A stretch of DNA of 64,000 bases, from the NCBI GenBank assembly GCA_002269645.1, contig NIVC01000023.1:124001-188000 (forward strand). Direction: 5' to 3'. The position numbers were made by a program, and so were the translations under genes. Of this stretch, positions 2,424 to 33,700 are shown piece by piece. This DNA is from Macrostomum lignano. Lineage: Eukaryota. Position 1 is the first letter of the stretch, and the number at the start of each line of letters is the position of its first letter. The notes below the pieces were generated by a model, which saw only the letters and a list, made by a program, of their open reading frames with translations, had not been told where the DNA came from and made no database searches.

Positions 2424-5400
2424 CTAGAAGTCGTCGTCGCTGTCCACCTGTTGCGCAACTTTGCGACCGCCGCCGTGGCCGCCGCCGATGCCGCCCATGC
2501 CTCTGGGCATTCCCGCCGGCGGCCTGGTAGGGTCCTCGGTCGAGTCCAAGCCAGATGAATCTTCATCTTCTTCGTCGAAGTAGGTGGCTTCGCTGCCGGA
2601 TTCGTCGTCTTCGTCGTCGTCTTCGTCGGACAAATCGGCGCCCATGGAGCCGAAATTGCGCTTGGCGCCACCGCCGGCGCCTGGTCGACCACCGGCGGAT
2701 CCGTGCATGCCGCCTGTTGGCGCCTTTGGCCGGCTAATCAGCTCATCTGAGGGAATCGAATTTCCGGGATGGCTTGGCGTAAATGGTGCCCAATACGTCA
2801 AAGATGACGCCCAAAGTGTCAGAGATTCAAGCCCTCAAAGTGTCAGAGATCAGGTCTCAAAGTTTCAGAGATTCAGGCCTCAAAGTGTCAGAGATTCAGG
2901 CCTCAAAGTGTCAGAGATTTAGGCTTCAAAGTGTCAGAGATTCAAGCCCTCAAAGTGTCAGAGATTTAAGCCCTCAAAGTGTCAGAGATTTAAGCCCTCA
3001 AAGTGTCAGAGATTCAAGCCCTCAAAGTGTCAGAGATTCAAGCCTTCAAAGTGTCAGAGATTCAAGCCCTCAAAGTGTCAGAGATTCAGGCCTCAAAGTG
3101 TCAGAGATCAGGTCTCAAAGTGTCAGAGATGCAGGCCCTCAAAGTGTCAGAGATCAGGTCTCAAAGTGTCAGAGATTCAAGCCCTCAAAGTGTCAGAGAT
3201 CAGGTCTCAAAGTGTCAGAGATGCAGGCCCTCAAAGTGTCAGAGATTCAAGCCCTCAAAGTGTCAGAGATTCAAGCCCTCAAAGTGTCAGAGATTCAGGC
3301 CTCAAAGTGTCAGAGATGCAGGCCCTCAAAGTGTCAGAGATGCAGGCTCTTAAAGTGTCAGAGATTCAAGCCCTCAAAGTGTCAGAGATCAGGTCTCAAA
3401 GTGTCAGAGATTCAAGCCCTCAAAGTGTCAGAGATCAGGTCTCAAAGTGTCAGAGATGCAGGCCCTCAAAGTGTCAGAGATTCAAGCCCTCAAAGTGTCA
3501 GAGATCAGGTCTCAAAGTGTCAGAGATTCAAGCCCTCAAAGTGTCAGAGATCAGGTCTCAAAGTGTCAGAGATGCAGGCCCTCAAAGTGTCAGAGATTCA
3601 AGCCCTCAAAGTGTCAGAGATCAGGTCTCAAAGTGTCAGAGATGCAGGCCCTCAAAGTGTCAGAGATTCAAGCCCTCAAAGTGTCAGAGATTCAAGCCCT
3701 CAAAGTGTCAGAGATTCAGGCCTCAAAGTGTCAGAGATGCAGGCCCTCAAAGTGTCAGAGATTCAAGCCCTCAAAGTGTCAGAGATCAGGTCTCAAAGTG
3801 TCAGAGATTCAAGCCCTCAAAGTGTCAGAGATCAGGTCTCAAAGTGTCAGAGATGCAGGCCCTCAAAGTGTCAGAGATTCAAGCCCTCAAAGTGTCAGAG
3901 ATTCAAGCCCTCAAAGTGTCAGAGATGCAGGCCCTCAAAGTGTCAGAGATGCAGGCCCTCAAAGTGTCAGAGATGCAGGCCCTCAAAGTGTCAGAGATGC
4001 AGGCTCTTAAAGTGTCAGAGATTCAAGCCCTCAAAGTGTCAGAGATCAGGTCTCAAAGTGTCAGAGATGCAGGCCCTCAAAGTGTCAGAGATCAGGTCTC
4101 AAAGTGTCAGAGATCAGGTCTCAAAGTGTCAGAGATTCAAGCCCTCAAAGTGTCAGAGATTCAAGCCCTCAAAGTGTCAGAGATTCAAGCCCTCAAAGTG
4201 TCAGAGATCAGGTCTCAAAGTGTCAGAGATCAGGTCTCAAAGTGTCAGAGATGCAGGCCCTCAAAGTGTCAGAGATTCAAGCCCTCAAAGTGTCAGAGAT
4301 TCAGGCCTCAAAGTGTCAGAGATTCAAGCCCTCAAAGTGTCAGAGATTCAAGCTCTCAAAGTGTCAGAGATTCAAGCCCTCAAAGTGTCAGAGATTCAAG
4401 CCCTCAAAGTGTCAGAGATTCAGGCCTCAAAGTGTCAGAGATTCAAGCCCTCAAAGTGTCAGAGATCAGGTCTCAAAGTGTCAGAGATCAGGTCTCAAAG
4501 TGTCACAGATCAGGTCTCAAAGTGTCAGAGATTCAAGCCCTCAAAGTGTCAGAGATTCAAGCCCTCAAAGTGTCAGAGATTCAAGCTCTCAAAGTGTCAG
4601 AGATTCAAGCCCTCAAAGTGTCAAAGATTCAAGCCCCTTAAAGTGTGAGAGATTCAGGCCCTCAAAGTGTCAGAGTTTCAGGCTTCAAAGTGTCAGAGAT
4701 GGCGCCTAAAGGGCCAGAGATGTCGGCCCAAAATTAGAAATTTGGGCTGTCAGACAAGACACTTCAATATGAGTTAATACACTCACTAGCGTTGCTATCC
4801 TCGCTCTCGCTTGACTCAGCCCCGTCGCTGGCAACATCGTCGGACAGTTGATCGTCGAGTCCGGCCTTGGCTTTGCCGCCAGACCGCGGCTTCTTGGCCA
4901 TCTCCTGCCTGGCCGCCGCCTCAGCCGTCCTCTCCAGCTCGGCGGCAGTCTGCTCGCGCTCCGACCGGCAGAATTCTTCGTATTGAGCCTCCAAAAAGCT
5001 GAGATTGCGAAATTTTAATAAATAAATCCGATAGAGTCGGTCGAGTTCCTCTTCGATACGCTCGTATTCGTCCATGTAGGCAGGTCGGACAGCCTGCGCG
5101 TGTGTTCAAATGGTTTTTTAAATCTTATTTTTCGTTTTTTTATAGATACGTCGCTTTTGACCTACTAATAGTAGTGTATCATATTAAATCTAATTTAGAT
5201 GCTCTTCTTCTGATGCTAAACACTGCTGATGCTCCTGCTGTTTTCTATAGTTTGGAGCCACTGATGTATATCGTTTTGAGCCCCTGCTGTCTATAGTTTG
5301 GCGCTACTGATGTCTATGTTTGGCGCCACTGATACCTATAGTTTGGCGCCACTGAAGCATATAGTTTGGCGCCACTGATGCATATAGTTTGGCGCCACTG

Positions 5401-6793
5401 ATGCTTATAATTTTGAGCCACTGATGCTTATAGTTTGGCGCCACTGATGACTATAGTTTGGCGCCACTGATACCTATAGTTTGGCGCCACTGATGACTAT
5501 AGTTTTGAGCCACTGATGCTTATAGTTTGGCGCCACTGATGCCTATAGTTTGGCGCCACTGATGCATATAGTTTGGCGCCACTGATGCATATAGTTTGGC
5601 GCCACTGATGCATATAGTTTGGCGCCACTGATGCATATAGTTTGGCGCCACTGATGACTATAGTTTGGCGCCACTGATGACTATAGTTTGGCGCCACTGA
5701 TACCTATAGTTTGGCGCCACTGATGACTATAGTTTTGAGCCACTGATGCTTATAGTTTGGCGCCACTGATGCCTATAGTTTGGCGCAACAACCTCCACAA
5801 ATTCTAATGATCACCTGCAACGTGCTCAATCGTTTCTGATTTCGTTCCAGCTCGCTTTTCTTCTTATCAATTTTGGCTTGCAAATTCGCCTCGTCGCTTG
5901 CAATGTTCTCCAAAGCTGATTGAGTCTTCTTTAATTCGGCCTCGATAGTTTTGATATTGCCGCGGATGCCCTTCTCAACTTGAGTAGTCTCCAACTGGCG
6001 GGCTAAGGCCAGAGAACGTAAATCTCTGAGGTCAGGCTCCCGGTTCAGCAGGTCGTACAGGGCGGCGCCGCGGGAGGTGATTTCTGACGCGAGTCGTCGG
6101 CATTCTTTGATCTCGTGTGGCTAAAAAGGGATGTTTTAATATGTAAAGAAATAAATTGAATATAATAAAATCTCGGTTTAAAAAAGATCCCTTACATTTT
6201 ATACTTTTAAAAAAATTCTACTTCACAAATAGAACAGTAAAGAACAAATAAATTTGCTTTTCTGAAATTCTAAAATTTTAATAAAGTGAGCATTCGAAAT
6301 AGATCAATACAACACTAGCCCAAAGAAGCAACTGCCCTAAGTACTAAACTTAAATGCACAAAATAAAGTAAAAATAAAAAAGTTTTTAGTTAAAGTTGCT
6401 TACCTTGGCTGCTCCAAGACTCAAAGAGCTTTCATTTTGACTTGTTTCTGAACCAGAATTAATGTTTTTCATTGCCTGATACAACTGGGATGTCATTTTT
6501 AGGAGTTCTTTTACTGCATGACCATCGGCTTGATAAAGCTTCTTCGTGTTTAGCTTGATATGAGCTTTAAGTGCCATACTCTGAGCAACCATTTTAATAA
6601 AAATCACTCGATCTTGTTCGCTGTCGATCTCTTTTGGTATATCCATGCCTGGGTCGAAGCGTTTTGCCAACCAAACGAGGATTTCAGCAACAAGTCGAAA
6701 GTTAGGGGAACGAAAGTTTTCCATGCTGATGAGTCTAGGGTACCCTAGAGCTCTCATCATTTCTGTAAAGCTTCTTATGTCTCTGAATGACAT
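2424..6793 (-). CDS. CLUAP1: Clusterin-associated protein 1 / IFT38, 441 aa; exons 6793-6404, 6120-5815, 5093-4787, 2746-2424
   Basis: [93 protein letters not shown] and the acidic tail ending DSDDDF match the CLUAP1 family. All introns are GT-AG with phases 0,0,1; total 1326 nt. Confidence 0.97.
2812..4700. repeat. Minisatellite of 22-24-bp variant units (core CTCAAAGTGTCAGAGAT) filling CLUAP1 intron 3
   Basis: About 80 tandem units visible directly; source of the spurious 621-aa and 491-aa ORFs. Confidence 0.98.
5222..5786. repeat. 23-bp minisatellite (ATAGTTTGGCGCCACTGATGCAT) in CLUAP1 intron 2
   Basis: Tandem units at a 23-bp period, e.g. 5342 to 5641 = 13 x 23. Confidence 0.97.
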
Positions 6794-7206
6794 AGCCACT
6801 TCGTGTTTCGTACAGTATTCGCGATTGATAGACCCTAACAGAATGCAATGCGCATTCGATAAAAGAACTAAAAAAAACAATGTTAAATGTATGTTTGAGT
6901 CTGTAGACATTCCATTAATTTCAAAAACAAAGAAATACGTTTATATTAAATTTTCTTATTAACCTTAGTTTAGCATATTTTACTGAACTATTATTAACTT
7001 TCAAAATACATTTCATCGCTAGCAAGCTTTGTTTTGTTATAATTTATAAAGTAGAACGGTGCAAATTTTTAAAATTAGAAGAGGGCAGGTTCGGACTGCG
7101 CGCACGTGCGCAATTGCTTGAAGCTTTCTGTGATTGTTTATTAGGACTAAAAATTGTATATTTGTTTTTATCTCCGCTAACGCAAAACCGACTGTGGTAA
7201 TCAGTA
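6794..7206. promoter_or_regulatory. Candidate bidirectional promoter between CLUAP1 and BAG1
   Basis: Divergent start codons are 414 bp apart. A 12-bp perfect palindrome GCGCACGTGCGC (7100-7111) contains an E-box CACGTG in a GC island within AT-rich DNA. Confidence 0.55.
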
Positions 7207-11890: not shown

Positions 11891-14920
<3,030 letters not shown>

Positions 14921-17370: not shown

Positions 17371-17641
17371 TGGGCGTCGTCACTGTATCCGGATGCATCA
17401 AAATGAAACAAATGCAAATTATAACAAACAAATGTGAGAATGCAATGCCAACAGCGCCAAATAGTAAATATATTAACAATAATTGTCTCAGAGTTTATTT
17501 TCATTCTGATTAGCTAACTTCTCTCTGAACAAACATACAACAACAACAACTGTTTTATTTCTGAGAGTTCACGTCTCCAATATTTTGGTTGCTGTCTGGC
17601 GTTCCAAGTGCTACTCCGTTCGTTTGTCAGTTGCCGCGCCA

Positions 17642-18147
17642 TCAGATACGGAGCCGAGAGAACACCAGACCGCGCTTTGAAGCCGGTATAGCGTTTCGCA
17701 AAATCAGCTTCAGCAATGAGTCGACTTTCACATCGACGTCCTTTCCGAGGCCAACCGAAGCTAAGGTCGAGAAGCGCTCCTCCGGCTTCTGCTCAACCGC
17801 AGGCGGCGAAGTTGCTGGCCGTTTAGTCAGCTCCTCTTCCATCTGCTCCGGATCGGCTAGCACGGAATGACGGGCTGAAATCGATTTATTTATGGTAGAT
17901 ATTTAGTTTAGATATTTAGTATAGGAGAATCAGACGCTTCAATGAAAGCAGTCGTGCCCATTCCACTGATCCCGCAGCACTGCTACACAGGGTGTCCACA
18001 GCTCCCCTGACTTTCCCATCCTCAGACAGGCATTGTTGCACAGGCCCCAAATTAATGAGCTATCCCAGACTCACGGTGCAGCAGAGTCAGCAGAAGGCAG
18101 AGCAGAGTCAACCAAGTCCAACGCCGATTACCAACTTGAGCGCACAT
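17642..18147 (-). CDS. Putative secreted peptide precursor (prohormone-like), 101 aa; exons 18147-18075, 17874-17642
   Basis: The spliced product is MCAQVGNRRWTWLTLLCLLLTLLHPRHSVLA-DPEQMEEELT-KR-PATSPPAVEQKPEER-FSTLASVGL-GK-DVDVKVDSLLKLILRNAIPAS-KR-GLVFSRLRI*. Donor C|GTGAGT and acceptor TTTCAG| are in phase 1, there is an in-frame stop upstream of the ATG, and AATAAA lies at 17559-17554. Confidence 0.7.
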
Positions 18148-18892
18148 CTTGTCCAGACTGCCCGTTCGTTGAGAAGTTGTTTTGCCTTGTACTGAGCAGA
18201 AAGTGTCGATTTTGAAATAGAAATCTCCCCAGTCGGTGCTTGGTTATATAGACTTCTGTAGGTGGGGGAGGGGGCTGCATCTCCCAGCTGGCGCCTTTTC
18301 TGTGCGCTGGTTCCGCAAACAAGGCAAAGCCCGACGCTGCACCTGCTACTGCCGACGCTCTGCGCAGAAAATTTCTTTGACTTTGAAGAATCTCCAGCCT
18401 CCAAAAGCCTGTGCTAACGCTATTTGATGGCTCAGGTGAGTGAGACCTAAGAGAAAGAAGGAAATTATATTTAGAAATGGACCAACCGGACATCTGTGCG
18501 CAGAAAATTTCCTACCCAAGATCGAGCCAGCGTCCCGGGTCTTTGCGCCACATCTGTATGGAAATTAAACGCCTGGCTCAACAGCGAGTCTTTGCAAACA
18601 TTTTCCAGCATCGTTTGCACCTGCAGCCAGCTGTCTTCCCGGGTTTCCGACTGATTTTGAAGACATCTTCTGGATTAAAAAGAAGCGCTAAGCGGGTTTT
18701 GGCTGACTGCAACAACAGAATACACTAGTAGTAGGGTATAGGAACAGTTTTATTGTATTTTGCGAATAGCTTTAATAAACATATTAACCATTAATATTGT
18801 TGTTGTTATTAACTGGAGATGACAGCAAAATCATCATGAAAACTGATGTCGAACTGTCTGCATTGAGGTGCCGCAACCCTAAGGTGCGCCGT

Positions 18893-19031
18893 AGCCTACA
18901 TTAACTTGGAGCTGAATTGGAATATCGGCTTGGCTCTGCTCTTGCAATTAACGCCCAGCTTGAGGGCCAACCCCCGAGACACAGTGAAGTGTACATTCCT
19001 AACGATAAATAAAGTTAGGGCCGCTGTACAC

Positions 19032-19065
<34 letters not shown>

Positions 19066-19230
19066 ATGACTGCGTACGTATCCGCGCGCTTGTGTGCCTG
19101 CTCAGGGGAGTCTGCGGAATGGGCAGTGATGCCTCTCGCCGGTTGTGTGACAATGTCGCTTAAAGTGCGCCAGGGTGCACGCAGCCTCAGATTAGAAAAA
19201 TCCTACGGATTGCGGCCCCCTCCAATAAAA
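18893..19230 (+). mobile_element. 5'-truncated copy of the tRNA-SINE family seen full-length at 40970-41328; internal (TG)n expansion
   Basis: Body sequence (AAAGTTAGGGCCGCTGTACAC...GTATCCGCGCGCTTGTGTGCCTGCTCAGGG...GTCGCTTAAAGTGCGCCAGGGTGCAC) is shared with 41040-41310. Confidence 0.9.
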
Positions 19231-19283: not shown

Positions 19284-22200
19284 TTAGAACATCTCCACGG
19301 AAGTGAAGAAGTTGACAATAACAAGCACCAGCACCAGTAGAGCCACGTGGCACAGCGCCAGCTTCGGCAGAGACATCAGCAAGTTCAAGCGTTCCCTACG
19401 CCGCAGGTTCACCATCAGTAGGCAGACAAAGACCAGCATCTCTTGTCGGCCATTCTGGATGACTCGCAGCAGCAGTAGAAACACCGTGTGCGACAGTTTT
19501 GTACTGAGCAGCGGTACTATTCTAAATTCGAACATTCGCTGTAAACTCAGTTTAATCTTCCACCAGGCATTGCAAGATTTGGCTCCTTGAATGAAACTTG
19601 TCGGCGAGCTGAGCAGCAGCGGATACACGTCGTATAGGAGCAGCTCCTGGCTAAGGACGTCGTCTACCGCTAATCTGCCAGTTAGAAGACTTTCGTAGAA
19701 GTTTCCGGCACTGCGCATGTAACTTCCGGTGCTGATCAGGATCATTCTTCCGATGGTTAGAGCGGCTTCTTGCAGCGAAATCAAGCTGCTGCAAAATTGG
19801 AAGCGAATTGGACTGACGTTGTTGTTGCTAAGTAACCTGTCGTTGCTAAGTAACTCGTCGTTGCTAAGTAACCTGTCGTTGCTAAGTAACTCGTCGTTGC
19901 TAAGTAACCTGTCGTTGCTAAGTAACTCGTCGTTGCTAAGTAACCTGTCGTTGCTAAGTAACTCGTCGTTGCTAAGTAACCTGTCGTTGCTAAGTAACTC
20001 GTCGTTGCTAAGTAACTCGTCGTTGCTAAGTAACCTGTCGTTGCTAAGTAACTCGTCGTTGCTAAGTAACCTGTCGTTGCTAAGTAACTCGTCGTTGCTA
20101 AGTAACTCGTCGTTGCTAAGTAACCTGTCGTTGCTAAGTAACCTGTCGTTGCTAAGTAACCTGTTGTTGCTAAGTAACTCGTCGTTGCTGAGTAACCTGT
20201 TGTTGCTGAGTAGCCTGTTGTTGCTAATGTAATTAATGTTGCTAAGTAACCTGTTGTTGCTAATGTAATTAATGTTGCTAAGTAACCTGTTGTTGCTAAT
20301 GTAATTAAAATGTTACTAATGTAATTAATGTTGCTTATGTAAAAGCCGGTGCTAATTTAATATAAACCTTTGTTTCGTAAAATAACATTGATATGAAATA
20401 ATTTCACTGTGGAGTTGCCAATAGCAACGCTCTGAACCACATCGAGCTCAATTCACGGAAAATGTTACTCACTTATGCAACGTAAGGCTGAATATCACTT
20501 GAAAATAATAAGCGCACCGATCCAAGATGCAGTGGGACACAATGAGCAGCAGCAGCAGGCGACAGACCATCCTAGTTTTGTTCACCAACAGGCGTCGGAG
20601 ACCGCGCGATAGGGACTGATTGCGAGTTACTATCGCTTGACTATGCTGCAGCAGGACTGACTTCTGGTCGCTGTTGCTAGGGTAAACTATACTGGACACG
20701 AATGTGGCGCACACAGTTGCTAGGGGACCTAGAAGCCGGGGGATTAGGGATAAACAAAATTATAGTTTTGAATTTTGCAGCCTGATGAACGCAGGGACAT
20801 GCTCATTCCCCGTGTGATGGGAACCCCTGTTAGTGGAATCTCTGCGAAGGGGAATCCCTGCAATGAGAATCACTTTAGGGAATCTTTGTGGAGAATCCCT
20901 TTGAGGGGAATCTCTATGAGGGGAATCCCTGTGAGGGGAATTTCTGTGGGGAAATCCCTGCAATGAGAATCAATTTGGGAATTTTGTGGAGAATCCCTGT
21001 GAGGGTAATCCCTGTGCGGAGAATCCCTTTGAAGGAATCCATTTGAGAGGAATCCCTGTGAGGGGAATCCATTTGAGAGGAATCCCTATGAGGTGAGTTC
21101 CTTTGAGGGGAATCCCTGTGAGGGAAATCCCTCTTTGAGGGGAATCCCTCTTTGAGGGGAATCCCTCTGAGGAGAATCTCTTTGAGGGGATTCCCTGTAT
21201 GGGGAATCTTACTGAAGGAAATCCATGCGAGGGGAATGCTTTCGAAGAGAATTCCGCGGGGAAGTTCTGCTAGGGGTGAATTCCTGTGAGATTAGGGTAA
21301 TTCTTCAGCGAGGGAGAATGTTTATTAAAAATGAAAAAAGCCAAACCTAGCGTGCAAATGATCCTAGAACCCAGCACAAAATCCTTATGCGCCAGGTGAT
21401 AGGGCCTGGCACTGGTGAGAAGGCACTGCACAGATCCGATTAGCAGCAGGCTTTGCATCTCTGATTCAGTGAGTTTCGACAGCTGCGGTCGCAGAATGAG
21501 AATGCTGGTTAGCGGCGGTAGCTGGCAGACAGCCACAAGGAATAGGATAGACTCAACAGGGTCCATCAGGAAGTTGTATCTGCATTGTTGACGGTTTTTT
21601 GTAGTTGCTCTTTGTAAAAGAAATTCATTTCTCTGACTCCCTGAGCACAGACAAGAGCCAATGCTGTACGCAGGGCACGCACTCATCCACACAGCTCACA
21701 CTGGGTGTACAGCGACCCCGACTTTCTAATCAGTCAGGGATGTACACTCTGCTCAGCTGTTCTGCCCGTCTTATTAAAGATTTCTAAAATAGTGTTATTC
21801 TCGAAAAAAATGTTTTAGGTGATTATTTTCCATTTTTCTGTATACAATTTAGGAACCTTTTTTAGACTTACCTAAACAGCACCTGAAGCAGGTTAAGATG
21901 CTTTTGAAAGTTAACCAGCCTCAATAGCAGACTGATGGTCAGTATGTACGCCACGTGCAAGATGTTAGTAAAAAACCTATTTGATTCTCTGAGGCTGTCG
22001 TATTTTTTTAATACTGATTCTAGATCGTCTGAGGTCCTGTTGAACACTTCCACAGATCTGCGTGTTGGTTTGATTCTTTTAGATTGGAATTAGTCGATTA
22101 ACAGGTGTCACTATCTACTGTACACTCCAATCAACAGGTATCACTCACTAGTGCACTCTAAAATCAACAGGTATCACTCACTAGTGCACTCTAAAATCAA

Positions 22201-25200
22201 CAGGTATCACTCACTAGTGCACTCTAAAATCAACAGGTATCACTCACTAGTGCACTCTAATCAACAGGCATCACTCACTAGTGCACTCTAATCAACAGGT
22301 ATCACTCACTAGTGCACTCTAATCAACAGGCATCACTCACTAGTGCACTCTAATCAACAGGTATCACTACTCACTAGTGCACTCTAATCAACAGGTATCA
22401 CTCACTAGTGCACTCTAAAATCAACAGGTATCACTACTCACTAGTGCACTCTAATCAACAGGCATCACTCACTAGTGCTCTCTAATCAACAGGCATCACT
22501 CACTAGTGCTCTCTAATCAACAGGCATCACTCACTAGTGCTCTCTAATCAACAGGCATCACTCACTAGTGCACTCTAATCAACAGGCATCACTCACTAGT
22601 GCACTCTAAAATCAACAGGTATCACTACTCACTAGTGCACTCTAATCAACAGGCATCACTCACTAGTGCTCTCTAATCAACAGGCATCACTCACTAGTGC
22701 TCTCTAATCAACAGGCATCACTCACTAGTGCACTCTAATCAACAGGTATCACTACTCACTAGTGCACTCTAATCAACAGGTATCACTACTCACTAGTGCA
22801 CTCTAATCAACAGGTATCACTCACTAGTGCACTCTAAAATCAACAGGTATCACTACTCACTAGTGCACTCTAATCAACAGGCATCACTCACTAGTGCTCT
22901 CTAATCAACAGGTATCACTCACTAGTGCACTCTAAAATCAACAGGTATCACTCACTAGTGCACTCTAAAATCAACAGGTAATCAAGTGTTTATACCTGAT
23001 AGCCTGAAAGAAAAATATTGGCATTTGCCACGCTGTCAAAATCAAATCGTGGATGTTGAGAATTTTATTAATAAACAGTAGAGACACCGCCAGGCACATC
23101 AGGTGGAAGGCCTTGAACCAGAGAACAGATTTTAAACTGGTTGACAGGACGCAGCTTAATAGAAATACGTGTAGAAATGCTGAAAAAACGTTTTAAGAAT
23201 TTAAATTTGACTTTGATAAGATAATACGGAAACAGACTGGCAAATTGAAAACAGACTGGCAAATTGAAAACAGACTGGCAAATTGGAAACAGACTGGCAA
23301 ATTGAAAACAGACTGGCAAATTGAAAACAGACTGGCAGACTGGAAACAGACTGGCAAATTGAAAACAGACTGGCAAATTGAAAACAGACTGGCAGACTGG
23401 AAGCAGACTGGCAGATTGGAAACAGACTAGCAAATTGAAAACAGACTGGCAGACTGGAAGCAGACTGGCAAATTGAAAACAGACTGGCAGATTGGAAACA
23501 GACTGGCAGATTGGAAACAGACTGGCAAATTGGAAACAGACTGGCAGATTGGAAACAGACTGGCAGATTGGAAACAGACTGGCAAATTGGAAACAGACTG
23601 GCAGATTGGAAACAGACTGGCAGATTGGAAACAGACTGGCAAATTGAAAACAGACTGGCAGATTGGAAACAGGCTGGCAGATTGGAAACAGACTGGCAGA
23701 TTGGAAACAGACTGGCAAATTGAAAACAGACTGGCAGATTGAAAACAGACTGGCAGATTGGAAACAGACTGGCAGATTGGAAACAGACTGGCAAATTGAA
23801 AACAGACTGGCAGATTGGAAACAGACTGGCAGATTGGAAACAGGCTGGCAGATTGGAAACAGACTGGCAGATTGGAAACAGACTGGCAAATTGAAAACAG
23901 ACTGGCATATTGAAAACAGACTGGCAGATTGGAAACAGACTGGCAGATTGGAAACAGACTGGCAAATTGAAAACAGACTGGCAGATTGGAAACAGACTGG
24001 CAGATCGGAAGCAGACTGGCAGATTGGAAACAGACTGGCAAATTGGAAACAGACTGGCAGATTGAAAACAGACTGGCAGACTGGAAGCAGACTGGCAGAT
24101 TGGAAGCAGACTGGCAGATTGGCTAATTGTCTCACCAATAAGGAGCTGCCATCGAATCAGCAGTTGTTCCATTCTGGTGTCCACCATGACGCAGATGATG
24201 CAGAGCAGGATCGGGACGCAGTTGCAGACGAGCATGAGCAGACGGCTGCGCAGAAACGACTCAAACAGATAGCAGATGTGGTAGCTTATTGGCTTTGGCC
24301 TGTCTTTGATGGCTGGTGTAATTAATAATCACAAATTTATTAACTAGAATTGTCTTTACTAAACTAAAACAATATTAGTTAACAGGGTCACGTTATTGGC
24401 GCAGTAAGAGGTTATGGCGCCACCTAAAGGACTCAATAAAGAGTGGCGCCACCTGAAGGACTCAATAAAGAATGGCGCTACCTGAAGGACTCAATAAAGA
24501 ATGGCGCTACCTGAAGGACTCAATAAAGAATGGCGCCATCTGAAGGATTCAATAAAGAATGGCGCCACCTGAAGGATTCAATAAAGAATGGCGCCACCTG
24601 AAGGATTCAATAAAGAATGGCGCCACCTGAAGGATTCAATAAAGAATGGCGCCACCTGAAGGATTCAATAAAGAATGGCGCCACCTGAAGGACTCAATAA
24701 AGAATGGCGCCACCTGAAGGACTCAATAAAGAATGGCGCCACCTGAAGGACTCAATAAAGAGTGGCGCCACCCGAAGGTTTCAATAAAGAATGGCGCCAC
24801 CTGAAGGATTCAATAAAGAATGGCGCCACCTGAAGGATTCAATAAAGAATGGCGCCACCTGAAGGACTCAATAAAGAATGGCGCCACCTGAAGGATTCAA
24901 TAAAGTAACGGCGCCACCGGAAGGACCCAATAAAGAATGGCGCCACCTGGAGGGCGTTGATTTTCAAAGAATACAAAATTTTGAGTACGTCGGCTCACAA
25001 TTGGGATCCGTGGTTTGCAGCAGACCATACAAATGCCTAATCCGGCTCATGATATGACACGTTGCCATGGTGATAGTTCGAAGCGCAATAAAGTCGGTGA
25101 ACCGAATAGCTAATTTTCGAATCGAGCTGGCGAGCGCAGTAAAAAACAAGCAGGTAAAACCAAGGATCCCGTAGCAAATGATTTTATTCGGATAAATGGG

Positions 25201-26948
25201 GGAAATTTTTTCACATTTTCGTCCTTTAGGACGGCCTTGCATCCGCATAGAAAAAGCATCTTCGTCACTGAATTTGAGGTACAGGCGGTACAGAAAGGTG
25301 CAAGTTATGAAGGCCAGGATGTAGGGCACCAGCAGGCGTCTGAACAGGTTCGTCAGAGAGCTGCCCAGCTCGCTCAGGCTCAACGTTTCACTGACGGACT
25401 TGCCTGTGTGAGAGTGCGGTTTGATGGCCACAGCTTTTGTATCGTCTTGTTTGAGATCTGAACACACAGAGATACCCTAACTATAGCTATTTTTAGCAGC
25501 TAATTCATTCTCACTGAATTGTCGGATTTACCAGCACCGGGATTTCCCCTGATAGCTATTTTTAGCATCCAGGTATTTACCACTTTCTTCTCGACGATTT
25601 CAATGCGGTTGGGATTCCCTAATTATAGCTATTTTTAGCAGCTAGTTCATTCTCACTGAATTGTCGGATTTACCAGCACCGGGATTTCCGATGATAGCTA
25701 TTTTTAGTACCCAAGATATTTACCACCGTCTTTACGACGATTTCAATGCGATTAGGATTCCCTGGCAATTTGCAATTATAGCTATTTTTAGCAGCTAATT
25801 CGTTCTCACTAAATTGTCGGATTTACTACCACGGGGATTCCCATGATAACTATTTTTAGCATCCAGGTATTTACCACTGTCTTCTCTCGAAGATTTCAAT
25901 ACGATTTGGATTCCCTAATTATATTCGTAGGCGGTCGTAGCTATTTTTAGCAGCTAGCTCAGTGGCCCTGAATCGGTTGTGCCTTAAAGTGCGCCAGGGT
26001 GCACACTGCCCCCTGCTTATGATAAACCCCCTTACTGCAACATTCATAGATATTTTTCGGTGCGAAACATCACAGTTACACCCTGGATAAACCAATTTAC
26101 TGACAAATTACCCTGACATTGTGGCGTTTCCAGCTAACAGATGCAATAGAGAAATCAGTGCTTCGGTGCCACCTGTTAATTCGTCAATGCAGGTGTATCT
26201 GAAAATTAAAGCTATTATCAAAAAATTTCTAAGCCCCCCTCGACCAGCTAGTAATTACCTGTGGCGTCAGCATGCAGACAGCATTTTGCTTTCGCGCAAC
26301 TTCAATTAGCAAATGCGTCAACGAAACAAAACTTTTTGAATGCATATCTGTTGCCAACATAAATAACTAATCATTGATCTTAAGATGAAAAATAATTGGC
26401 TCATAATTTTGAGTTCAAAGAACTGATTAATTTGAAAAGCCAGGAAGAGACTGCTATTTTTTTTATTAGAGGCAGGGGTGGTGTGCATCCTGGCGGACTT
26501 TAATCGACATTGTCACAACCGGCGAGAGGCATTACTGCCCATTCCGCCGACTCCCCTGAGCAGGCACACAAGCGCGCGGATGCGTACGCAGTCACACGCA
26601 CATGCACACACTCACACAGGAGTGTACAGCGGGCTGTTAATTTCGTGTCTTCTTCCCCTAGAAGAAGAGTTGTCCGATTTTTATTCAGGGAACGACTGAA
26701 CTTCCGGTAAATATATCTAGGAATTGACTCAAGGGAACAGCGCTACATCCGGTTCAGCAGAAGGCCGAACTCTCACCTTCGTCGGCAGACCGGAAAGCCT
26801 CCTTAGGCATTCGAGTGAGCGGATGGCCGATTAAGAGCGCCTCCATGGTGCGGCTGGAGAGGTGCGCAGGCCGAGTCTTTGGGTGTCTGACAAAGTTCTC
26901 CAGCTCCTCGGCTCTGAAACTCGCCAGTCGAACAGTCTGGGCATCCAT
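19284..26948 (-). CDS. Orphan multi-pass membrane protein, 731 aa; exons 26948-26777, 25457-24999, 24312-24136, 23179-22996, 22057-21872, 21579-21347, 20728-20473, 19812-19284
   Basis: Eight AG/GT-bounded open exons join with matching phases (1,1,1,2,2,1,2) into a 2196-nt stop-free ORF with about 10-13 hydrophobic segments. Exons 1-4 are conserved in frame in the duplicate copy. No family recognised. Confidence 0.8.
19820..20340. repeat. 18-bp minisatellite (GTCGTTGCTAAGTAACCT / ...ACTC) in intron 7 of the membrane-protein gene
   Basis: 22 exact copies of GTTGCTAAGTAAC, 20 of them at an 18-bp period from 19824 to 20166, plus degenerate units. Confidence 0.97.
20790..21290. repeat. Degenerate GGGGAATCCC-based short-period repeat in intron 6
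   Basis: Dozens of (G)GGAATCC(C) units with variable spacers. Confidence 0.9.
21620..21790 (-). mobile_element. Divergent fragment related to the tRNA-SINE body
   Basis: The minus strand AGTGTACAT..CCT...AAAGT..GG..GCTGTACAC..TGTG...CTGCGTA...GCTCAGGGAGTC aligns by eye to the SINE at 41120-41240. Confidence 0.55.
22115..22980. repeat. 31-35-bp minisatellite (AATCAACAGGTATCACTCACTAGTGCACTCT) in intron 4; contains the proximal duplication breakpoint
   Basis: About 27 copies with nested palindromes CACTAGTG and AGTGCACT; the same array restarts at 30131. Confidence 0.97.
23228..24120. repeat. 19-bp minisatellite (AAACAGACTGGCAGATTGG) in intron 3, copy A
   Basis: About 47 units; source of the 200-356-aa spurious ORFs. 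Confidence 0.98.
24412..24950. repeat. 29-bp minisatellite (ATAAAGAATGGCGCCACCTGAAGGACTCA) in intron 2, copy A
   Basis: About 18 units. Confidence 0.98.
25483..25960. repeat. About 150-bp dimeric tandem repeat (subunits start ATAGCTATTTTTAG) in intron 1, copy A
   Basis: Units start at 25483, 25625, 25778 and 25937 (periods 142-159); shorter version at about 33855-34185 in copy B. Confidence 0.85.
26455..26640 (-). mobile_element. 3' half of the tRNA-SINE (copy A); paralogous copy at about 34548-34730
   Basis: Reverse complement of the SINE 3' body with an A-rich tail (TTTTTTTATTAGAGGCAGGGG). Confidence 0.85.
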
Positions 26949-27619
26949 TATTTCGATTTGTTGAAAGTTTCAATTTTTTTATATATAGTAAATATACAAG
27001 CCAGTTTTTAATATGGGATGAATTCGTTATATAAGCTTAGTCGTGCTGTGCTGTAAATGATTTTTGCTAACATCAATGTCTATGGCCGAAACCTCTGTTA
27101 TTTAAACCTCACTGGCCAGGTGGTTTGTCGTGAGTCATTGATCAATGAACTGGCTTTCTAACTTTCATTCTTCCCTGTCTCAGTTTGAAAACCTCGTAAA
27201 AATAGTTTGGCTTTCATTTAGTATTGATAATTTTTAGAGCTTCCAGGACAGCGCTGTAATCACGTTGAACGATAACGAACATATCTATTGTACTCATAGA
27301 TCGATAGAGACAAACAGGCTTTATTACGAGATATTGCTTTTAATTTCGTGTATATTGTATAAGTCGATATTGCCAACTGATAATTTCTGTTTGAGTCAAA
27401 TAAAAGTGCAAAGGCTGGTATACACGAGGCAAAAAATATAAAAAAGTAGTATAAAAAAAAGATTAAATTGTTGTTTGTTTGTACGAGCGTATTCTATCAT
27501 ATGAATTTATTACATTCGCAATAATTACCCTATTTATCATCGGACACATGTTCGTAAAGATCTACTCGTATGTAGCTTTACACACTAGGGTTACTCTGAC
27601 TAAGCGGGGCCAACATAGT

Positions 27620-27950
27620 AAATCCCTGTCAGTGGAATCCCACTCAGTGAAATCCCCTTCCCGGAAAACCCCCTCAGTAAAATCCCCTTTTTGTGGAATC
27701 CCCCTTGATAGAATCCCCCTCAGTGGAATCCACTTCAGTGGAATCCCCTTCAGGGAAATCCCACTTTTAGTGGAACCTCCCTCTTTGGAAACCCCTCTTT
27801 GTGTAACCCCCCTCAATGGAATCGAATCCCCCTCAATGGAATCCCCTTAGGGAAATCACCTCCAGTGGAATCCCTCTCAGGGAAATCCTCCTCTTAGCGG
27901 AATCCCTCTCACTGGAATCCCCCTCGGTGGAGTCCCCTCAGTGGAACCCA
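27620..27950. repeat. GTGGAATCCCC-based short-period repeat downstream of MEIG1 (copy A; paralogue about 36440-36770)
   Basis: Many GGAATCCC units; same core as 20790-21290. Confidence 0.88.
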
Positions 27951-28529: not shown

Positions 28530-30715
28530 ATTTAAGCTGAAAAATTATTTGCATTATTAAAGTCTTTTAAAGTTTTGTACATAAGACAGGTATTTATAGT
28601 ACAAAAAAAAACATTAAAATAAAAAATTGCAATTTGAAAAAACTTTGTTTCTTACACATAAGGCAGCTAAAATTACTTTTAATTAATTGGAAAGACATTT
28701 AGAAATTTATCTAATAGCTAAGATACTATTTTTGGTTTTATTACTGTGTCGACAGTGCGTAATAAAATAAACATTAAATAATGTTCCGCAAGAAGATATT
28801 GCAGTAATCTATACGTAGCTCGTACATACAGTAGTCACGTAGTTACTACTACGAGCGCACATTATGATTCAAAGATGCTGCTAAAACTAAAAACAATGAA
28901 ACTCATTTTATAGTTTATCCAAGTTTATTTTAATCGGGATAGATCAAATTTATCATCTGAGTTAACTGATGCTTGTTATTGTTATCGCACAGTCGAAAAT
29001 CCAAGATGCAACACGCAACTGATGCCAGTTAATAAATAATGCTAACACTTGTATGGGGTCGACCGGTCGAGGAATAAAAATTTCAGTATACTTTACCCAG
29101 TAGTATTCAGTCAAAAAGAATTTATAACAACAACGAGAAACAACAATAAGCTTCTTACTGACTACATACTTTGTAAACAATGCCCCCGACATCTAACTGT
29201 ATAACTGTATTGGTATTGATAGATTTTTCCAGAAGAAAATCATTCTGTCGAATGCCTGAGACGTGAAAATTCACTATTCTTACCCAAAAAGAATATTTTT
29301 AAATCTTTTTTTTGAATGAAAAATAAAAATAGAGATAAATGACACGTTGTTGACTGGGATTAGGCTGCACGGTTATATTAATTAAGAATAGGTTATTATA
29401 TAAAGTGAAAGAAAATTTTTATGTCAAAAGTATGCACAGAAACTATTATGTATTACCTATCAAGGATAGTATAAGGAAATAAAAAATAATAAACATGTTT
29501 TTAAATAAAAAAAAATTTTTTTCCTAAAAAGCAATTAAATTGTAGGTATGACGTTTTTAAATTTGTTAAGATGTACAATTTATACGTTTTTTCAAAAGTA
29601 ACACATGTTCCAAGAAAAGAGGCGGAACAGAATTTAAACTAGTGGTAGTGTAGTGTGTCATGGCTAGCTGCTAGCATATAAAAGATGTTAAAGCGGAATC
29701 ACTATGGGCACGAGATTTAAATATATTGATAGTCAATATATATGCTATTTAGCCTATATTGTTCTCTTATCAAAGATTAACTACGAATTCTTATCGTTGT
29801 TTTTACTGTACAGTTTTACTGTGTACAGTACAATAGTACTGTTCTGTCTGTTCAGTACACTATAGTATACTGTACTGTAAAAATGACTGGCTAGGTAGAC
29901 CCTTGCCACTAGCATCATACACGCGTCTAAAAGTTGAGGTCAAGCATAAAAGATTAACTAGCAAATATTTTCGTACAGTGTAACCATCACCATGCCATGG
30001 ATCCTCCCTCACGGCCTCACCCAGTGGGCCAGTGCCCATATACCAAGCCAAAGTATCTAGTCAATCTGGCAACAGGACGATCCAGTAACAGACGATTTGG
30101 CAACAGTCAAAACGGCGACAGTCAATCTGGTGCTCTCTAATCAACAGGCATCACTCACTAGTGCACTCTAATCAACAGGTATCACTCACTAGTGCTCTCT
30201 AATCAACAGGCATCACTCACTAGTGCTCTCTAATCAACAGGCATCACTCACTAGTGCACTCTAATCAACAGGTATCACTACTCACTAGTGCACTCTAATC
30301 AACAGGTATCACTACTCACTAGTGCACTCTAATCAACAGGTATCACTCACTAGTGCACTCTAAAATCAACAGGTATCACTACTCACTAGTGCACTCTAAT
30401 CAACAGGCATCACTCACTAGTGCTCTCTAATCAACAGGTATCACTCACTAGTGCACTCTAAAATCAACAGGTATCATTCACTAGTGCACTCTAAAATCAA
30501 CAGGTATCACTCACTAGTGCAATCTAAAATCAACAGGTATCATTCACTAGTGCACTCTAAAATCAACAGGTATCACTCACTAGTGCACTCTAAAATCAAC
30601 AGGTATCACTCACTAGTGCATTCTAATCAACAGGTATCACTCACTAGTGCACTCTAATCAACAGGTATCACTCACTAGTGCACTCTAAAATCAACAGGTA
30701 ATCAAGTGTTTATAC

Positions 30716-33700
30716 CTGATAGCCTGAAAGAAAAATATTGGCATTTGCCACGCTGTCAAAATCAAATCGTGGATGTTGAGAATTTTATTAATAAACAGTA
30801 GAGACACCGCCAGGCACATCAGGTGGAAGGCCTTGAACCAGAGAACAGATTTTAAACTGGTTGACAGGACGCAGCTTAATAGAAATACGTGTAGAAATGC
30901 TGAAAAAACGTTTTAAGAATTTAAATTTGACTTTGATAAGATAATACGGAAACAGACTGGCAAATTGAAAACAGACTGGCAAATTGAAAACAGACTGGCA
31001 AATTGGAAACAGACTGGCAAATTGAAAACAGACTGGCAGATTGGAAACGGACTGGCAGATTGGAAGCGGACTGGCAGATTGGAAGCGGACTGGCAGATTG
31101 GAAACAGACTGGCAAATTGAAAACAGACTGGCAGATTGGAAACGGACTGGCAGATTGGAAGCGGACTGGCAGATTGGAAGCGGACTGGTAGATTGGAAAC
31201 AGACTGGCAAATTGAAAACAGACTGGCAGATTGGAAGCGGACTGGCAGATTGGAAGCGGACTGGCAGATTGGAAACAGACTGGCAAATTGAAAACAGACT
31301 GGCAGATTGGAAACGGACTGGCAGATTGGAAGCGGACTGGCAGATTGGAAGCGGACTGGTAGATTGGAAACAGACTGGCAAATTGAAAACAGACTGGCAG
31401 ATTGGAAGCGGACTGGCAGATTGGAAGCGGACTGGCAGATTGGAAGCGGACTGGTAGATTGGAAACAGACTGGCAGACTGGAAGCGGACTGGCAGATTGG
31501 AAGCAGACTGGCAGATTGGCTAATTGTCTCACCAATAAGAAGCTGCCATCGAATCAGCAGTTGTTCCATTCTGGTGTCCACCATGACGCAGATGATGCAG
31601 AGCAGGATCGGGACGCAGTTGCAGACGAGCATGAGCAGACGGCTGCGCAGAAACGACTCAAACAGATAGCAGATGTGGTAGCTTATTGACTTTGGCCTGT
31701 TCTTGATGGCTGGTGTAATTAATAATCACAAATTTAGTAACTAGAACAAGCAAGCAAGCAAGCATACAAATATTAGAGATTTAGTATATTTACATTGTCT
31801 TACTAAACTAAAACAATATTAGTTAACAGGGTCACGTTAATGGCGCAGTAAGATGTTATGGCGCCACCTGAAGGACACAATAAAGAATGGCGCCACCTGA
31901 AGGACACAATAAAGAATGGCGCCATCTGAAGGACTTAATAAAGAATGGCGCCACCTGAAGGATTCAATAAAGAATGGCGCCACCTGAAGGACACAATAAA
32001 GAATGGCGCCATCTGAAGGATTCAATAAAGAATGGCGTCATCTGAAGGACTCAATAAAGAATGGCGCCACCTGAAGAAAACAATAAAGAATGGCGCCACC
32101 TGAAGGACTCAATAAAGAATGGCGCCACCTGAAGGTTTCAATAAAGAATGGCGCCACCTGAAGGATTCAATAAAGAATGGCGCCACCTGAAGGACTCAAT
32201 AAAGAATGGCGCCACCTGAAGGACTCAATAAAGAATGGCGCCACCTGAAGGTTTCAATAAAGAATGGCGCCACCTGAAGGACTCAATAAAGAATGGCGCC
32301 ACCTAAAGGACTCAATAAAGAATGGCGCCACCTGAAGGACACAATAAAGAATGGCGCCACCTAAAGGTTTCGATAAAGAATGGCGCCACCTGAAGGACAC
32401 AATAAAGAATGGCGCCACCTGAAGGACCCAATAAATAATGGCGCCACCTGAAGGATTCAATAAAGAATGGCGCCACCTGAAGGAGTCAATAAAGAATGGC
32501 GCCACCTGAAGGATTCAATAAAGAATGGCGCCACCTGAAGGACTCAATAAAGAATGGCGCCACCTGAAGGTTTCAATAAAGAATGGCGCCACCTGAAGGA
32601 CCCAATAAATAATGGCGCCACCTGAAGGATTCAATAAAGAATGGCGCCACCTGAAGGAGTCAATAAAGAATGGCGCCACCTGAAGGATTCAATAAAGAAT
32701 GGCGCCACCTGAAGGACTCAATAAATAATGGCGCCACCTGAAGGTTTCAATAAAGAATGGCGCCACCTGAAGGTTTCAATAAAGAATGGCGCCACCTAAA
32801 GGACTCAATAAAGAATGGCGCCACCTAAAGGACTCAATAAAAAATGGCGCCACCTAAAGGACTCAATAAAGAATGGCGCCACCTGAAGGTTTCAATAAAG
32901 AATGGCGCCACCTGAAGGACTCAATAAAGAATGGCGCCACCTGAAGGACTCAATAAAGAATGGCGCCACCTAAAGGACTCAATAAAGAATGGCGCCACCT
33001 GAAGGACACAATAAAGAATGGCGCCACCTGAAGGACACAATAAAGAATGGCGCCACCTGAAGGACTCAATAAAGAATGGCGCCACCTGAAGGACTCAATA
33101 AAGAATGGCGCCACCTGAAGGACACAATAAAGAATGGCGCCACCTGAAGGACACAATAAAGAATGGCGCCACCTAAAGGACTCAATAAAGAATGGCGCCG
33201 CCTGAAGGACTCAATAAAAAATGGCGCCACCTGAAGGACTCAATAAAGAATGGCGCCGCCTGAAGGACTCAATAAAGAATGGCGCCACCTGAAGGATTCA
33301 ATAAAGAATGGCGCCACCTGGAGGGCGTTGATTTTCAAAGAATACAAAATTTTGAGTACGTCAGCTCACAATTGGGATCCGTGGTTTGCAGCAGACCATA
33401 CAAATGCCTAATCCGGCTCATGATATGACACGTTGCCATGGTGATAGTTCGAAGCGCAATAAAGTCGGTGAACCGAACAGCTAATTTTCGAATCGAGCTG
33501 GCGAGCGCAGTCAAAAACAAGCAGGTAAAACCAAGGATCCCGTAGCAAATGATTTTATGCGGATAAATGGGGGGAATTTTTTCACATTTTCGTCCTTTAG
33601 GCACCGGACCGCCTCGCATCCGCATAGACAAAGCATCTTCGTCACTGAATTTGAGGTACAGGCGGTACAGAAAGGTGCAAGTTATGAATGCCAGGATGTA

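What the first reader, a model, noticed from the sequence alone, without database searches (positions are those of the whole stretch)
17642..18147. Unannotated neuropeptide-precursor-like gene missed by the ORF track
Seen: splicing a 73-nt exon (hydrophobic signal) to a 233-nt exon gives a 101-aa protein. It has a signal peptide ending V-L-A, an acidic spacer, two KR sites and a GK site. Established: KR dibasic cleavage and Gly-Lys amidation signals define prohormones. Inference: candidate products are FSTLASVGL-amide, DVDVKVDSLLKLILRNAIPAS and GLVFSRL(RI). The last loosely recalls GL-x-x-x-RL myomodulin-type peptides, but I cannot assign a family, so this may be a new peptide family.
Basis: partly seen in the sequence, partly recalled or inferred. 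Interest (0 to 1): 0.72.

Follow-up and report, generated by a model that had tools for sequence, protein, structure and literature searches.

The report
Small orphan secreted-protein gene, flatworm
The two-exon gene is real and encodes a 101-residue secreted protein of the flatworm Macrostomum lignano that is already in UniProt under a misleading name, but nothing shows that it makes a neuropeptide.

Summary
On the minus strand, 18147-18075 (73 nt) joined to 17874-17642 (233 nt) across a 200-nt GTGAGT...TTTCAG intron gives a 101-aa ORF. It has a signal-peptide-like N-terminus (predicted cut SVLA31|D32), an acidic spacer, K42R43, G68K69 and K91R92.

The protein is 100% identical to UniProt A0A1I8GHD1 of Macrostomum lignano, so a public gene model already exists. 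Its name, "Endoplasmin", is not supported. A second, chimeric model uses the same splice junction.

The gene looks real. It has canonical splice sites and a TATA box. The ATG is the only one between the TATA box and the coding start. AATAAA follows the stop, and the frame is the best of six by codon usage. It is the only locus of this type in the window.

The prohormone reading is not demonstrated:
- Dibasic and G-K/R counts are what the composition gives by chance (P = 0.61 and 0.44).
- There is no G-K/R-K/R amidation site and no repeated peptide.
- K42R43 is followed by Pro.
- FSTLASVGL-amide would need two non-consensus monobasic cuts.
- An exhaustive search of 1.84 billion representative proteins found no relative.

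The only suggestive point is ...KR-GLVFSRL-RI at the C-terminus. It weakly recalls the planarian peptides GYHFFRL and GLRLMRL-amide (hhalign probability 1.5%), and it lacks the amidation Gly.

Verdict: an orphan secretory pro-peptide-like gene, with tissue and function unknown.

The parts
18245..18250 (-). TATA box (TATATA, within TATATAACC), about 95 nt upstream of the ATG
   Evidence: It is the only TATAWA in 17400-18400 on this strand.
18148..18215 (-). Inferred 5' UTR. The TSS is not mapped. It holds no upstream ATG, and the start context is GACAAGATGT (A at -3). An acceptor-like site, TCTGCTCAG|TAC, lies at about 18192.
   Evidence: no other ATG between 18260 and 18140. (the chimeric model P0002 starts an exon at about 18192).
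18075..18147 (-). Exon 1 coding part, 73 nt, residues 1-24 plus the first base of codon 25: the n- and h-regions of the signal peptide
17875..18074 (-). Intron, 200 nt, phase 1, GTGAGT donor and TTTCAG acceptor, GC 0.455 against 0.55-0.57 in the exons
17642..17874 (-). Exon 2 coding part, 233 nt including the TGA stop (17642-17644), residues 25-101
17855..17874 (-). End of the signal-peptide coding region (c-region PRHSVLA). Predicted signal peptidase cut is after A31, before D32.
   Evidence: -3/-1 rule; heuristic only, SignalP not available
17819..17824 (-). K42R43 dibasic site, followed by Pro44 and so probably a poor convertase substrate
   Evidence: for the sequence. The P1' Pro rule is from general knowledge, not tested here.
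17741..17746 (-). G68K69, followed by Asp. It is monobasic and non-consensus.
17672..17677 (-). K91R92, the one canonical dibasic site
17645..17671 (-). C-terminal nonapeptide GLVFSRLRI (residues 93-101), the most plausible released peptide if the protein is processed
17554..17559 (-). AATAAA poly(A) signal, 83 nt after the stop. A second one lies at 17494-17499.

Best explanation
A real, compact two-exon gene of the flatworm Macrostomum lignano encodes a 101-aa lineage-restricted (orphan) secretory pre-protein.

Shown:
- The exon-intron structure, and its identity to an existing public model.
- The absence of any recognisable domain or relative.

Inferred:
- The N-terminal 31 residues act as a cleavable signal peptide and send the protein into the ER.
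- The 70-aa Cys-free product has a disordered acidic, Pro-rich half (32-58) and a basic, partly helical half (59-101, net +5).
- It does not fold into a domain, so it is most likely handled as a small pro-peptide.
- The single canonical convertase site, K91R92, would release the C-terminal nonapeptide GLVFSRLRI and leave a fragment of 47-59 residues.

Whether this happens in neurons (regulated secretion) or in a gland is unknown.
For: - Gene structure.
- 100% identity over 101 aa to UniProt A0A1I8GHD1 (M. lignano). The same 18075/17874 junction is used in a second model, A0A1I8I1G0.
- The proposed frame is best of six by local codon usage, LLR -1 against -27 to -50 bits.
- It is the only locus of this architecture in the window, with 0.07 expected per 64 kb in nulls.
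- Exon GC is 0.55-0.57 against 0.455 in the intron.
- Signal-peptide anatomy and charge asymmetry.
- AlphaFold2 on the single sequence gives mean pLDDT 55.6, with residues 24-68 coil and helices at 8-23, 69-86 and 92-98, so no folded domain.
- No Pfam family and no PDB relative.
- The motif [KR][KR]G....RL[KRG] occurs in only 1.5e-4 of shuffles. It mirrors the MS-confirmed planarian peptides KR.GYHFFRL.KK/RK and KR.GLRLMRLa.GKR. The motif was chosen post hoc.
Against: - There is no transcript, peptide or expression evidence to hand. The public models may be ab initio predictions.
- No orthologue or paralogue was available, so there is no evidence of purifying selection.
- Cleavage-site counts are at chance.
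- There is no amidation signal in canonical form and no repeated peptides.
- The signal peptide was judged by heuristics, not by SignalP.
- The acceptor-like site at about 18192, used by the second model, means the transcript could start further upstream or be trans-spliced. The TATA-promoter inference is therefore soft.
Confidence: 0.5

Rival explanations
1. It is a bona fide neuropeptide prohormone founding a new, Macrostomum-restricted peptide family. It would be expressed in neurons, packed into dense-core vesicles and cut by PC2-type convertases into bioactive peptides (GLVFSRLRI or GLVFSRL, perhaps others).
For: - It meets the operational prohormone criteria of Collins et al. 2010: signal sequence, basic sites, fewer than 200 aa, and no similarity to non-neuropeptide genes.
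- The mature part is Cys-free and disordered.
- It has an acidic spacer after the signal peptide, as in Smed-spp-4.
- The C-terminal KR-G-x-x-F-x-R-L-R resembles the planarian and schistosome peptide (G/A)YHFFRL and GLRLMRL-amide.
Against: - Site counts are at chance.
- There is no G-dibasic amidation site. Amidated planarian peptides are almost always followed by GKR, GR-end or G-end.
- There are no paracopies.
- K42R43 is followed by Pro.
- The hhalign probability against the FRL family is 1.5%, and blastp-short E-values are 0.1-0.3 against only six sequences.
- Orphan secreted proteins are common in non-neural glands of this species. Of 76 prostate-limited transcripts, 31 had no BLAST hit, and 38 of 65 translated products had a signal peptide (PMC5977470). 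The prior is therefore modest.
Confidence: 0.2
2. It is an exocrine or gland-derived secreted product, such as a seminal-fluid or prostate protein, an adhesive or rhabdite-gland protein, or a host-defence peptide. It would have an anionic pro-piece and a cationic C-terminal half and would act outside the body or in the mating partner.
For: - Signal peptide, then an acidic piece (net -4), then a cationic half (net +5). I recognise this layout from memory as typical of antimicrobial-peptide precursors; that was not checked here.
- Predicted helix at 69-86.
- A TATA-type compact gene.
- Orphan secreted transcripts are abundant in M. lignano glands.
Against: - Amphipathicity is not unusual: maximum hydrophobic moment 0.54, P = 0.17 against shuffles.
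- The sequence was not found in the supplements held for the prostate-transcript paper.
- There are no expression data.
Confidence: 0.2
3. It is not a functional protein-coding gene. It would be a gene-prediction artefact or a young de novo ORF on a transcribed, possibly non-coding, locus in a very repeat-rich region.
For: - There is no homologue in about 15 billion proteins.
- Both UniProt entries are automatic models. One is plainly chimeric, running antisense through a cathepsin gene, and the other carries a wrong name.
- The window is packed with minisatellites that create long spurious ORFs.
Against: - The locus has a strong GTGAGT donor and TTTCAG acceptor, a single ATG after the TATA box with A at -3, and AATAAA 83 nt after the stop.
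- It has a textbook signal peptide.
- The frame has the best codon usage of six.
- Such a combination is expected 0.07 times per 64 kb.
- The gene lies in a unique, non-repeated island.
Confidence: 0.15
4. It is a fragment or relative of endoplasmin (GRP94/HSP90B1), as the UniProt name says.
For: - The name given by UniRef for A0A1I8GHD1.
- A signal peptide followed by an acidic stretch, as at the N-terminus of GRP94.
Against:
- blastp gives E = 0.17 over the signal-plus-acidic stretch only.
- There is no Pfam HATPase_c or HSP90 hit, no PDB hit and no KDEL.
- The exhaustive phmmer search finds no HSP90-family protein.
Confidence: 0.01

Closest known systems
Planarian 'FRL-containing' prohormones Smed-spp-18, spp-19 and grh-1 (schistosome npp-28). 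The MS-confirmed peptide is (G/A)YHFFRL, non-amidated.
   Same: Both are short secreted precursors. Both have a heptapeptide that starts with Gly right after K-R, has Phe at position 4, ends in R-L and is followed by a basic residue: KRGLVFSRLR against KRGYHFFRLR, 7 of 10 identical. The peptide is non-amidated.
   Different: The conserved YHFF core is absent. In the FRL family the peptide sits near the N-terminus and is followed by a conserved two-Cys C-terminal domain. Here the peptide is at the extreme C-terminus and the mature protein has no Cys. hhalign probability is 1.5%.
Flatworm RL/RM-amide (myomodulin-like) prohormones, e.g. Smed-spp-4 and Sm-npp-14 (GLRLMRL-amide, GLRNMRM-amide) and mpl-1/2 (AVRLMRL-amide)
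   Same: Both have a signal peptide, then an acidic spacer, then K-R, then G-L-x-x-x-R-L at the very C-terminus of a short precursor (spp-4 ends KKR-GLRLMRLG). GLVFSRL matches GLRLMRL at 4 of 7 positions.
   Different: The residue after R-L is Arg (CGT), not the Gly needed for amidation. There is a single copy rather than repeats. The M-R-L/M core is absent. The alignment needs a gap, with E = 0.1-0.3 against six sequences.
Orphan small secreted proteins of M. lignano glands, e.g. the prostate-limited Mlig-pro transcripts (PMC5977470)
   Same: Same species. Both have a signal peptide, no BLAST homologues and no domains.
   Different: No expression data link this gene to any gland. It was not found in the supplementary text of that paper.
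Endoplasmin / GRP94 (the name attached to the UniProt entry)
   Same: Only a signal peptide followed by an acidic stretch.
   Different: No HSP90 or HATPase domain, no KDEL and no significant similarity.

Membership tests
Neuropeptide prohormone (operational criteria of Collins et al. 2010, PMC2953531) | N-terminal signal sequence | tested here: met
   The n, h and c regions are present, with a -3/-1 site SVLA31|D32. AlphaFold2 gives a helix at 8-23. This is a heuristic test. SignalP was not available.
Neuropeptide prohormone (operational criteria of Collins et al. 2010, PMC2953531) | Basic cleavage sites that flank predicted or MS-confirmed peptides | tested here: inconclusive
   K42R43 (followed by Pro) and K91R92 exist. 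Their number equals the chance expectation for this composition (mean 1.9, P = 0.61). No MS data were available.
Neuropeptide prohormone (operational criteria of Collins et al. 2010, PMC2953531) | Precursor shorter than 200 aa and not similar to genes annotated as something else | tested here: met
   The precursor is 101 aa. It has no Pfam, PDB or sequence relative. The 'Endoplasmin' label is not borne out.
Neuropeptide prohormone (operational criteria of Collins et al. 2010, PMC2953531) | cDNA-verified transcript, expression in neurons or endocrine cells, and peptides detected and dependent on pc2 | not testable with these tools
   No M. lignano transcriptome, expression atlas or peptidome is reachable. 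Exact-product look-ups found no contigs.
Myomodulin-like / flatworm RL-RM-amide family | Peptides ending in -R-L or -R-M followed by Gly plus a basic site (or Gly at the precursor end), giving a C-terminal amide | tested here: not met
   GLVFSRL is followed by R-I-stop, with no Gly. The pattern [KR][KR].{4,12}R[LMF]G[KR] is absent.
Myomodulin-like / flatworm RL-RM-amide family | Several related peptide copies per precursor | tested here: not met
   There is only one GL...RL segment and no internal repeat in the 101 aa.
FRL-containing family (spp-18, spp-19, grh-1, npp-28) | (G/A)YHFFRL-type peptide after K-R, with a conserved Y/F-H-x-F-R-L core | tested here: not met
   GLVFSRL shares G, F4, R and L (4 of 7) but lacks the Y-H and F-R-L core.
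FRL-containing family (spp-18, spp-19, grh-1, npp-28) | Conserved C-terminal domain with two Cys after the peptide | tested here: not met
   The alignment shows invariant C40 and C61 in the family. The candidate's mature part has no Cys. hhalign probability is 1.5%.
Endoplasmin / GRP94 (HSP90 family) | HATPase_c and HSP90 domains, and a C-terminal KDEL | tested here: not met
   There is no Pfam hit, no HSP90 exon in the window, the protein ends in RLRI, and phmmer finds no HSP90 relative.
Cationic amphipathic host-defence peptide precursors | Anionic pro-piece, then a dibasic site, then a cationic peptide with significant helical amphipathicity | tested here: inconclusive
   The charge layout fits (-4 then +5). 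The maximum hydrophobic moment of 0.54 is not unusual (P = 0.17).

The most novel reading that the evidence does not exclude
The gene founds a Macrostomum-restricted neuropeptide family. Its active product would be the non-amidated C-terminal peptide GLVFSRL(RI), a far-diverged derivative of the flatworm RL/FRL peptides that lost (or never had) the amidation Gly. This would show how short-peptide families turn over in an early-branching rhabditophoran flatworm.
Probability: 0.15. Interest if true: 0.45.

Novelty: new member of a known kind. Interest (0 to 1): 0.25.

Why it matters
If this is a true neuropeptide gene, it would add one lineage-specific member to the poorly catalogued peptide complement of Macrostomum lignano, a regeneration and sexual-selection model. 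It would also give a testable peptide, GLVFSRLRI.

As it stands, the practical value is small:
- It shows that a spliced small secreted-protein gene escapes an unspliced ORF track.
- It shows that the public name "Endoplasmin" for A0A1I8GHD1 is unfounded.
- It shows that A0A1I8I1G0 is a chimeric model.
- It is a reminder that "signal peptide plus a few KR sites" is not evidence for a prohormone when basic residues make up 17% of the sequence.

Tried and rejected
1. Endoplasmin identity (the UniProt name). Rejected. There are no HSP90 exons in the window. There are no Pfam or PDB hits.
2. Homologue searches. The word-indexed search and the exhaustive phmmer search over 1.84 billion representatives returned only the protein itself.
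3. Exact-product look-ups for the 101-aa protein and for the 73-aa and 66-aa exon-2 ORFs. Nothing is on record, so no allelic, homeologous or orthologous DNA could be compared and no dN/dS could be computed.
4. Reaching M. lignano RL-amide precursors through Smed-spp-4. Only spp-4 itself came back.
5. Literature. No paper holds the peptide strings or the accessions. McVeigh 2009 (PMC2749192) is not held, and the search for Koziol 2016 did not return the paper itself. The supplements of Collins 2010 and Weber 2018 do not contain the strings.
6. Antimicrobial-like amphipathic helix. The hydrophobic moment is not significant.
7. A third exon through the alternative donor CTG|GTGTTC used by model P0002. 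It leads into the antisense strand of the cathepsin gene and a tandem array, so it was rejected as a chimeric prediction.
8. A resemblance of FSTLASVGL-amide to buccalin / allatostatin-A type ...GL-amides. I recalled this from memory only, so it is a lead and not a test. I did not pursue it, because both flanks are non-consensus monobasic sites.
9. AlphaFold2 on the single sequence gave low confidence (pLDDT 55.6), so no fold search was run.

Full report
**What is in the sequence**

On the minus strand an ATG at 18147 opens a 73-nt coding exon that ends at a consensus donor (CACC|GTGAGT). After a 200-nt intron ending ...ATTTCAG|, a 233-nt exon continues in frame to a TGA at 17644-17642.

Other gene signals:
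- A TATATA box lies at 18250-18245.
- No other ATG lies between it and the start codon, whose context has A at -3.
- AATAAA signals lie 83 nt (17559-17554) and 143 nt (17499-17494) after the stop.
- Exon GC is 0.55-0.57 against 0.455 in the intron.

**Whose gene it is**

The 101-aa product is 100% identical over its full length to UniProt A0A1I8GHD1 of the free-living flatworm Macrostomum lignano. So the window is M. lignano genomic DNA, and the gene model already exists publicly. It is "unannotated" only for the scan's unspliced ORF track.

A second UniProt entry, A0A1I8I1G0 (519 aa), contains residues 1-95 with the same 18075/17874 junction. When mapped onto the window it runs from 20726 to 13170 on the minus strand. 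It uses an alternative donor after K-R-G-L and ends in the antisense strand of a cathepsin gene and a tandem array, so it is a chimeric prediction.

**Is the gene more than chance?**

- With a codon table taken from the neighbouring cathepsin-L-like gene (295 codons), the proposed frame scores -1 bit. The other five frames score -27 to -50 bits.
- I ran a mechanical scan of both strands. It looked for an ATG, a signal-like N-terminus, a GTRAGT donor, a pyrimidine-rich YAG acceptor and a spliced ORF of at least 100 aa. It finds this locus and nothing else. Thirty first-order Markov windows gave 0.07 hits per 64 kb. The criteria were set post hoc, so this is only moderate evidence.
- The locus lies in a unique island between minisatellite arrays and is not repeated in the window.

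I take the gene as real with about 80-85% confidence. The missing piece is transcript evidence, which I could not reach.

**The protein**

- Residues 1-31 have the anatomy of a cleavable signal peptide: n-region MCAQVGNRR, h-region WTWLTLLCLLLTLL, c-region HPRHSVLA, with Val at -3 and Ala at -1.
- The 70-aa mature part has no Cys.
- Residues 32-58 are acidic and Pro-rich (net -4). Residues 59-101 are basic (net +5).
- AlphaFold2 on the single sequence gives low confidence (mean pLDDT 55.6). It predicts coil for 24-68 and helices at 69-86 and 92-98, so no folded domain.
- There is no Pfam family and no relative among solved structures.
- An exhaustive HMMER pass over 1.84 billion representative proteins returns only the query. 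That collection appears to hold known flatworm prohormones: the related word-indexed collection contains Smed-SPP-4.

**The "Endoplasmin" label**

The label is unfounded. The window contains no HSP90-type exon.

**Testing the prohormone signature**

But basic residues make up 12 of the 70 mature residues. In 100,000 shuffles of the mature sequence:
- The mean number of dibasic pairs is 1.9; 2 are observed (P = 0.61).
- G-[KR] occurs at least once in 44% of shuffles.
- Both conditions together hold in 25%.
- Two K-R pairs specifically occur in 8%.

There is no G-[KR]-[KR] site.

In the planarian reference peptidome (Collins et al. 2010, PMC2953531, Tables S2 and S3), MS-confirmed peptides are nearly always bounded by KR, KK or KKR. 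Amidated ones are followed by GKR, GR-end or G-end. I saw one low-scoring exception, FDPIMYa.GK in SPP-16.

Against that background:
- FSTLASVGL-amide needs a monobasic cut after E-E-R58, which has no basic residue at P4, P6 or P8. It also needs a G-K|D cut. Both are non-consensus.
- K42R43 is followed by Pro. General knowledge of convertase specificity says this is disfavoured, though I did not test it here.
- The one canonical site is K91R92. It would release GLVFSRLRI.

**The one suggestive feature**

The C-terminus ...AIPAS-KR-GLVFSRL-RI recalls two MS-confirmed planarian peptide types:
- KR.GYHFFRL.KK/RK from SPP-18 and SPP-19 (non-amidated; conserved as AYHFFRL in schistosomes).
- KR.GLRLMRLa.GKR from SPP-4, whose precursor also ends with this peptide.

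KRGLVFSRLR against KRGYHFFRLR is 7 of 10 identical. The motif [KR][KR]G....RL[KRG] appears in only 1.5e-4 of shuffles. However, the motif was defined after looking, and there are many peptide families one could have matched. The blastp-short E-values are 0.1-0.3 against only six sequences, and hhalign against the FRL-family alignment gives probability 1.5% over 10 columns.

The defining features of both families fail. There is no Gly for amidation and there are no repeats, which rules out the RL-amides. There is no YHFF core and no two-Cys C-terminal domain, which rules out the FRL family. It may work like such a precursor, but it cannot be filed as a member.

**How it most likely works**

Shown:
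- The gene structure.
- Identity to a public model.
- Orphan status.
- The lack of a folded domain.

Inferred: co-translational ER entry and signal-peptide removal after A31. The product is a Cys-free, largely disordered 70-aa polypeptide with an anionic N-half and a cationic C-half. Such products are usually matured by proteolysis rather than used as folded proteins. The expected cut is at K91R92, giving GLVFSRLRI plus a longer N-terminal fragment.

My rough estimates, which overlap:
- Neuropeptide or hormone precursor: about 0.2.
- Exocrine or defence product: about 0.2.
- Non-functional or artefactual ORF: about 0.15.
- The umbrella statement, a real orphan secretory pro-peptide-like gene: about 0.5.

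The base rate argues against jumping to "neuropeptide". In M. lignano, 31 of 76 prostate-limited transcripts had no BLAST hit, and 38 of 65 translated products had a signal peptide (PMC5977470).

**Novelty and score**

This is an uncharacterised member of a familiar kind, a small lineage-specific secreted peptide precursor. It is already present as an automatic, misnamed model in UniProt. The claim of a new neuropeptide family is not excluded but has no positive support beyond a weak, post hoc motif. Interest is 0.25.

- RNA-seq junction reads.
- Macrostomum transcriptomes.
- In situ or single-cell expression.
- Peptidomics.

Noticed in passing
window 11891-14920 (+): A cathepsin-L-like papain-family cysteine protease gene lies convergent with the candidate gene. 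It has a signal-peptide exon at 11891-12118 and Peptidase_C1 exons at about 13200-13310, 13779-14093 and 14700-14920 (Pfam E-values 1e-16 to 2e-31). Minisatellite arrays fill its introns (12466-13046, 13464-13708, 14243-14648).
   Followed up: partly
window 1-64000: The window is extremely rich in minisatellites, with 95 TRF rows. Examples are 2812-4700 (24 nt x 80), 31858-33324 (29 nt x 50), 54627-55962 (46 nt x 29) and the CT-rich array at 45091-46835. Most of the long ORFs in the mechanical ORF list, such as 2783-4648 and 44710-46845, are reading-frame artefacts of these arrays.
   Followed up: partly
window 22100-27946 and 30130-36774: The same series of arrays occurs twice. It consists of a 31-nt unit, a 19-nt unit (GGAAACAGACTGGCAGATT), a 29-nt unit (ATGGCGCCACCTGAAGGACTCAATAAAGA) and a 15-nt AATCCC... 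array. This suggests a segmental duplication of about 6-7 kb.
   Followed up: no
window 20726-13170 (-): UniProt A0A1I8I1G0 (519 aa, named 'Cadherin_2 domain-containing protein') maps here as a chimeric model. It joins junk ORFs upstream (20726-20475, 19787-19356), the candidate's two exons, and the antisense strand of the cathepsin gene plus a tandem array (14129-13170). The matching long ORF in the window, 13254-14291 (-), has no Pfam hit.
   Followed up: yes
window 17642-18147 (-): The public name 'Endoplasmin' for A0A1I8GHD1 has no support from sequence comparison and looks like an automatic-annotation error.
   Followed up: yes
window 6386-6910 (-): An exon-sized ORF has a strong match to Clusterin-associated protein 1 (Cluap1, Pfam E = 6.6e-52). 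Cluap1 is, as I recall, the intraflagellar-transport protein IFT38.
   Followed up: no
window 49728-50207 (+) and 41876-42310 (+): One ORF has a ribosomal L32p match (E = 5.7e-5, above the gathering score), possibly mitochondrial ribosomal protein L32. Another ORF has a short carboxylesterase-family match (E = 4.6e-6, just below the gathering score).
   Followed up: no
window 18893-19186: An interspersed repeat about 750 bp upstream of the candidate's ATG has copies at 41037-41306, 34574-34727 and 26483-26632 (82-87% identity).
   Followed up: no
window about 18186-18200 (-): An acceptor-like site, TCTGCTCAG|TACAAG, lies 45 nt upstream of the ATG and is used by the chimeric model. It could be a cis- or trans-splice acceptor, in which case the TATA box at 18250-18245 would not mark the only transcript start.
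   Followed up: no
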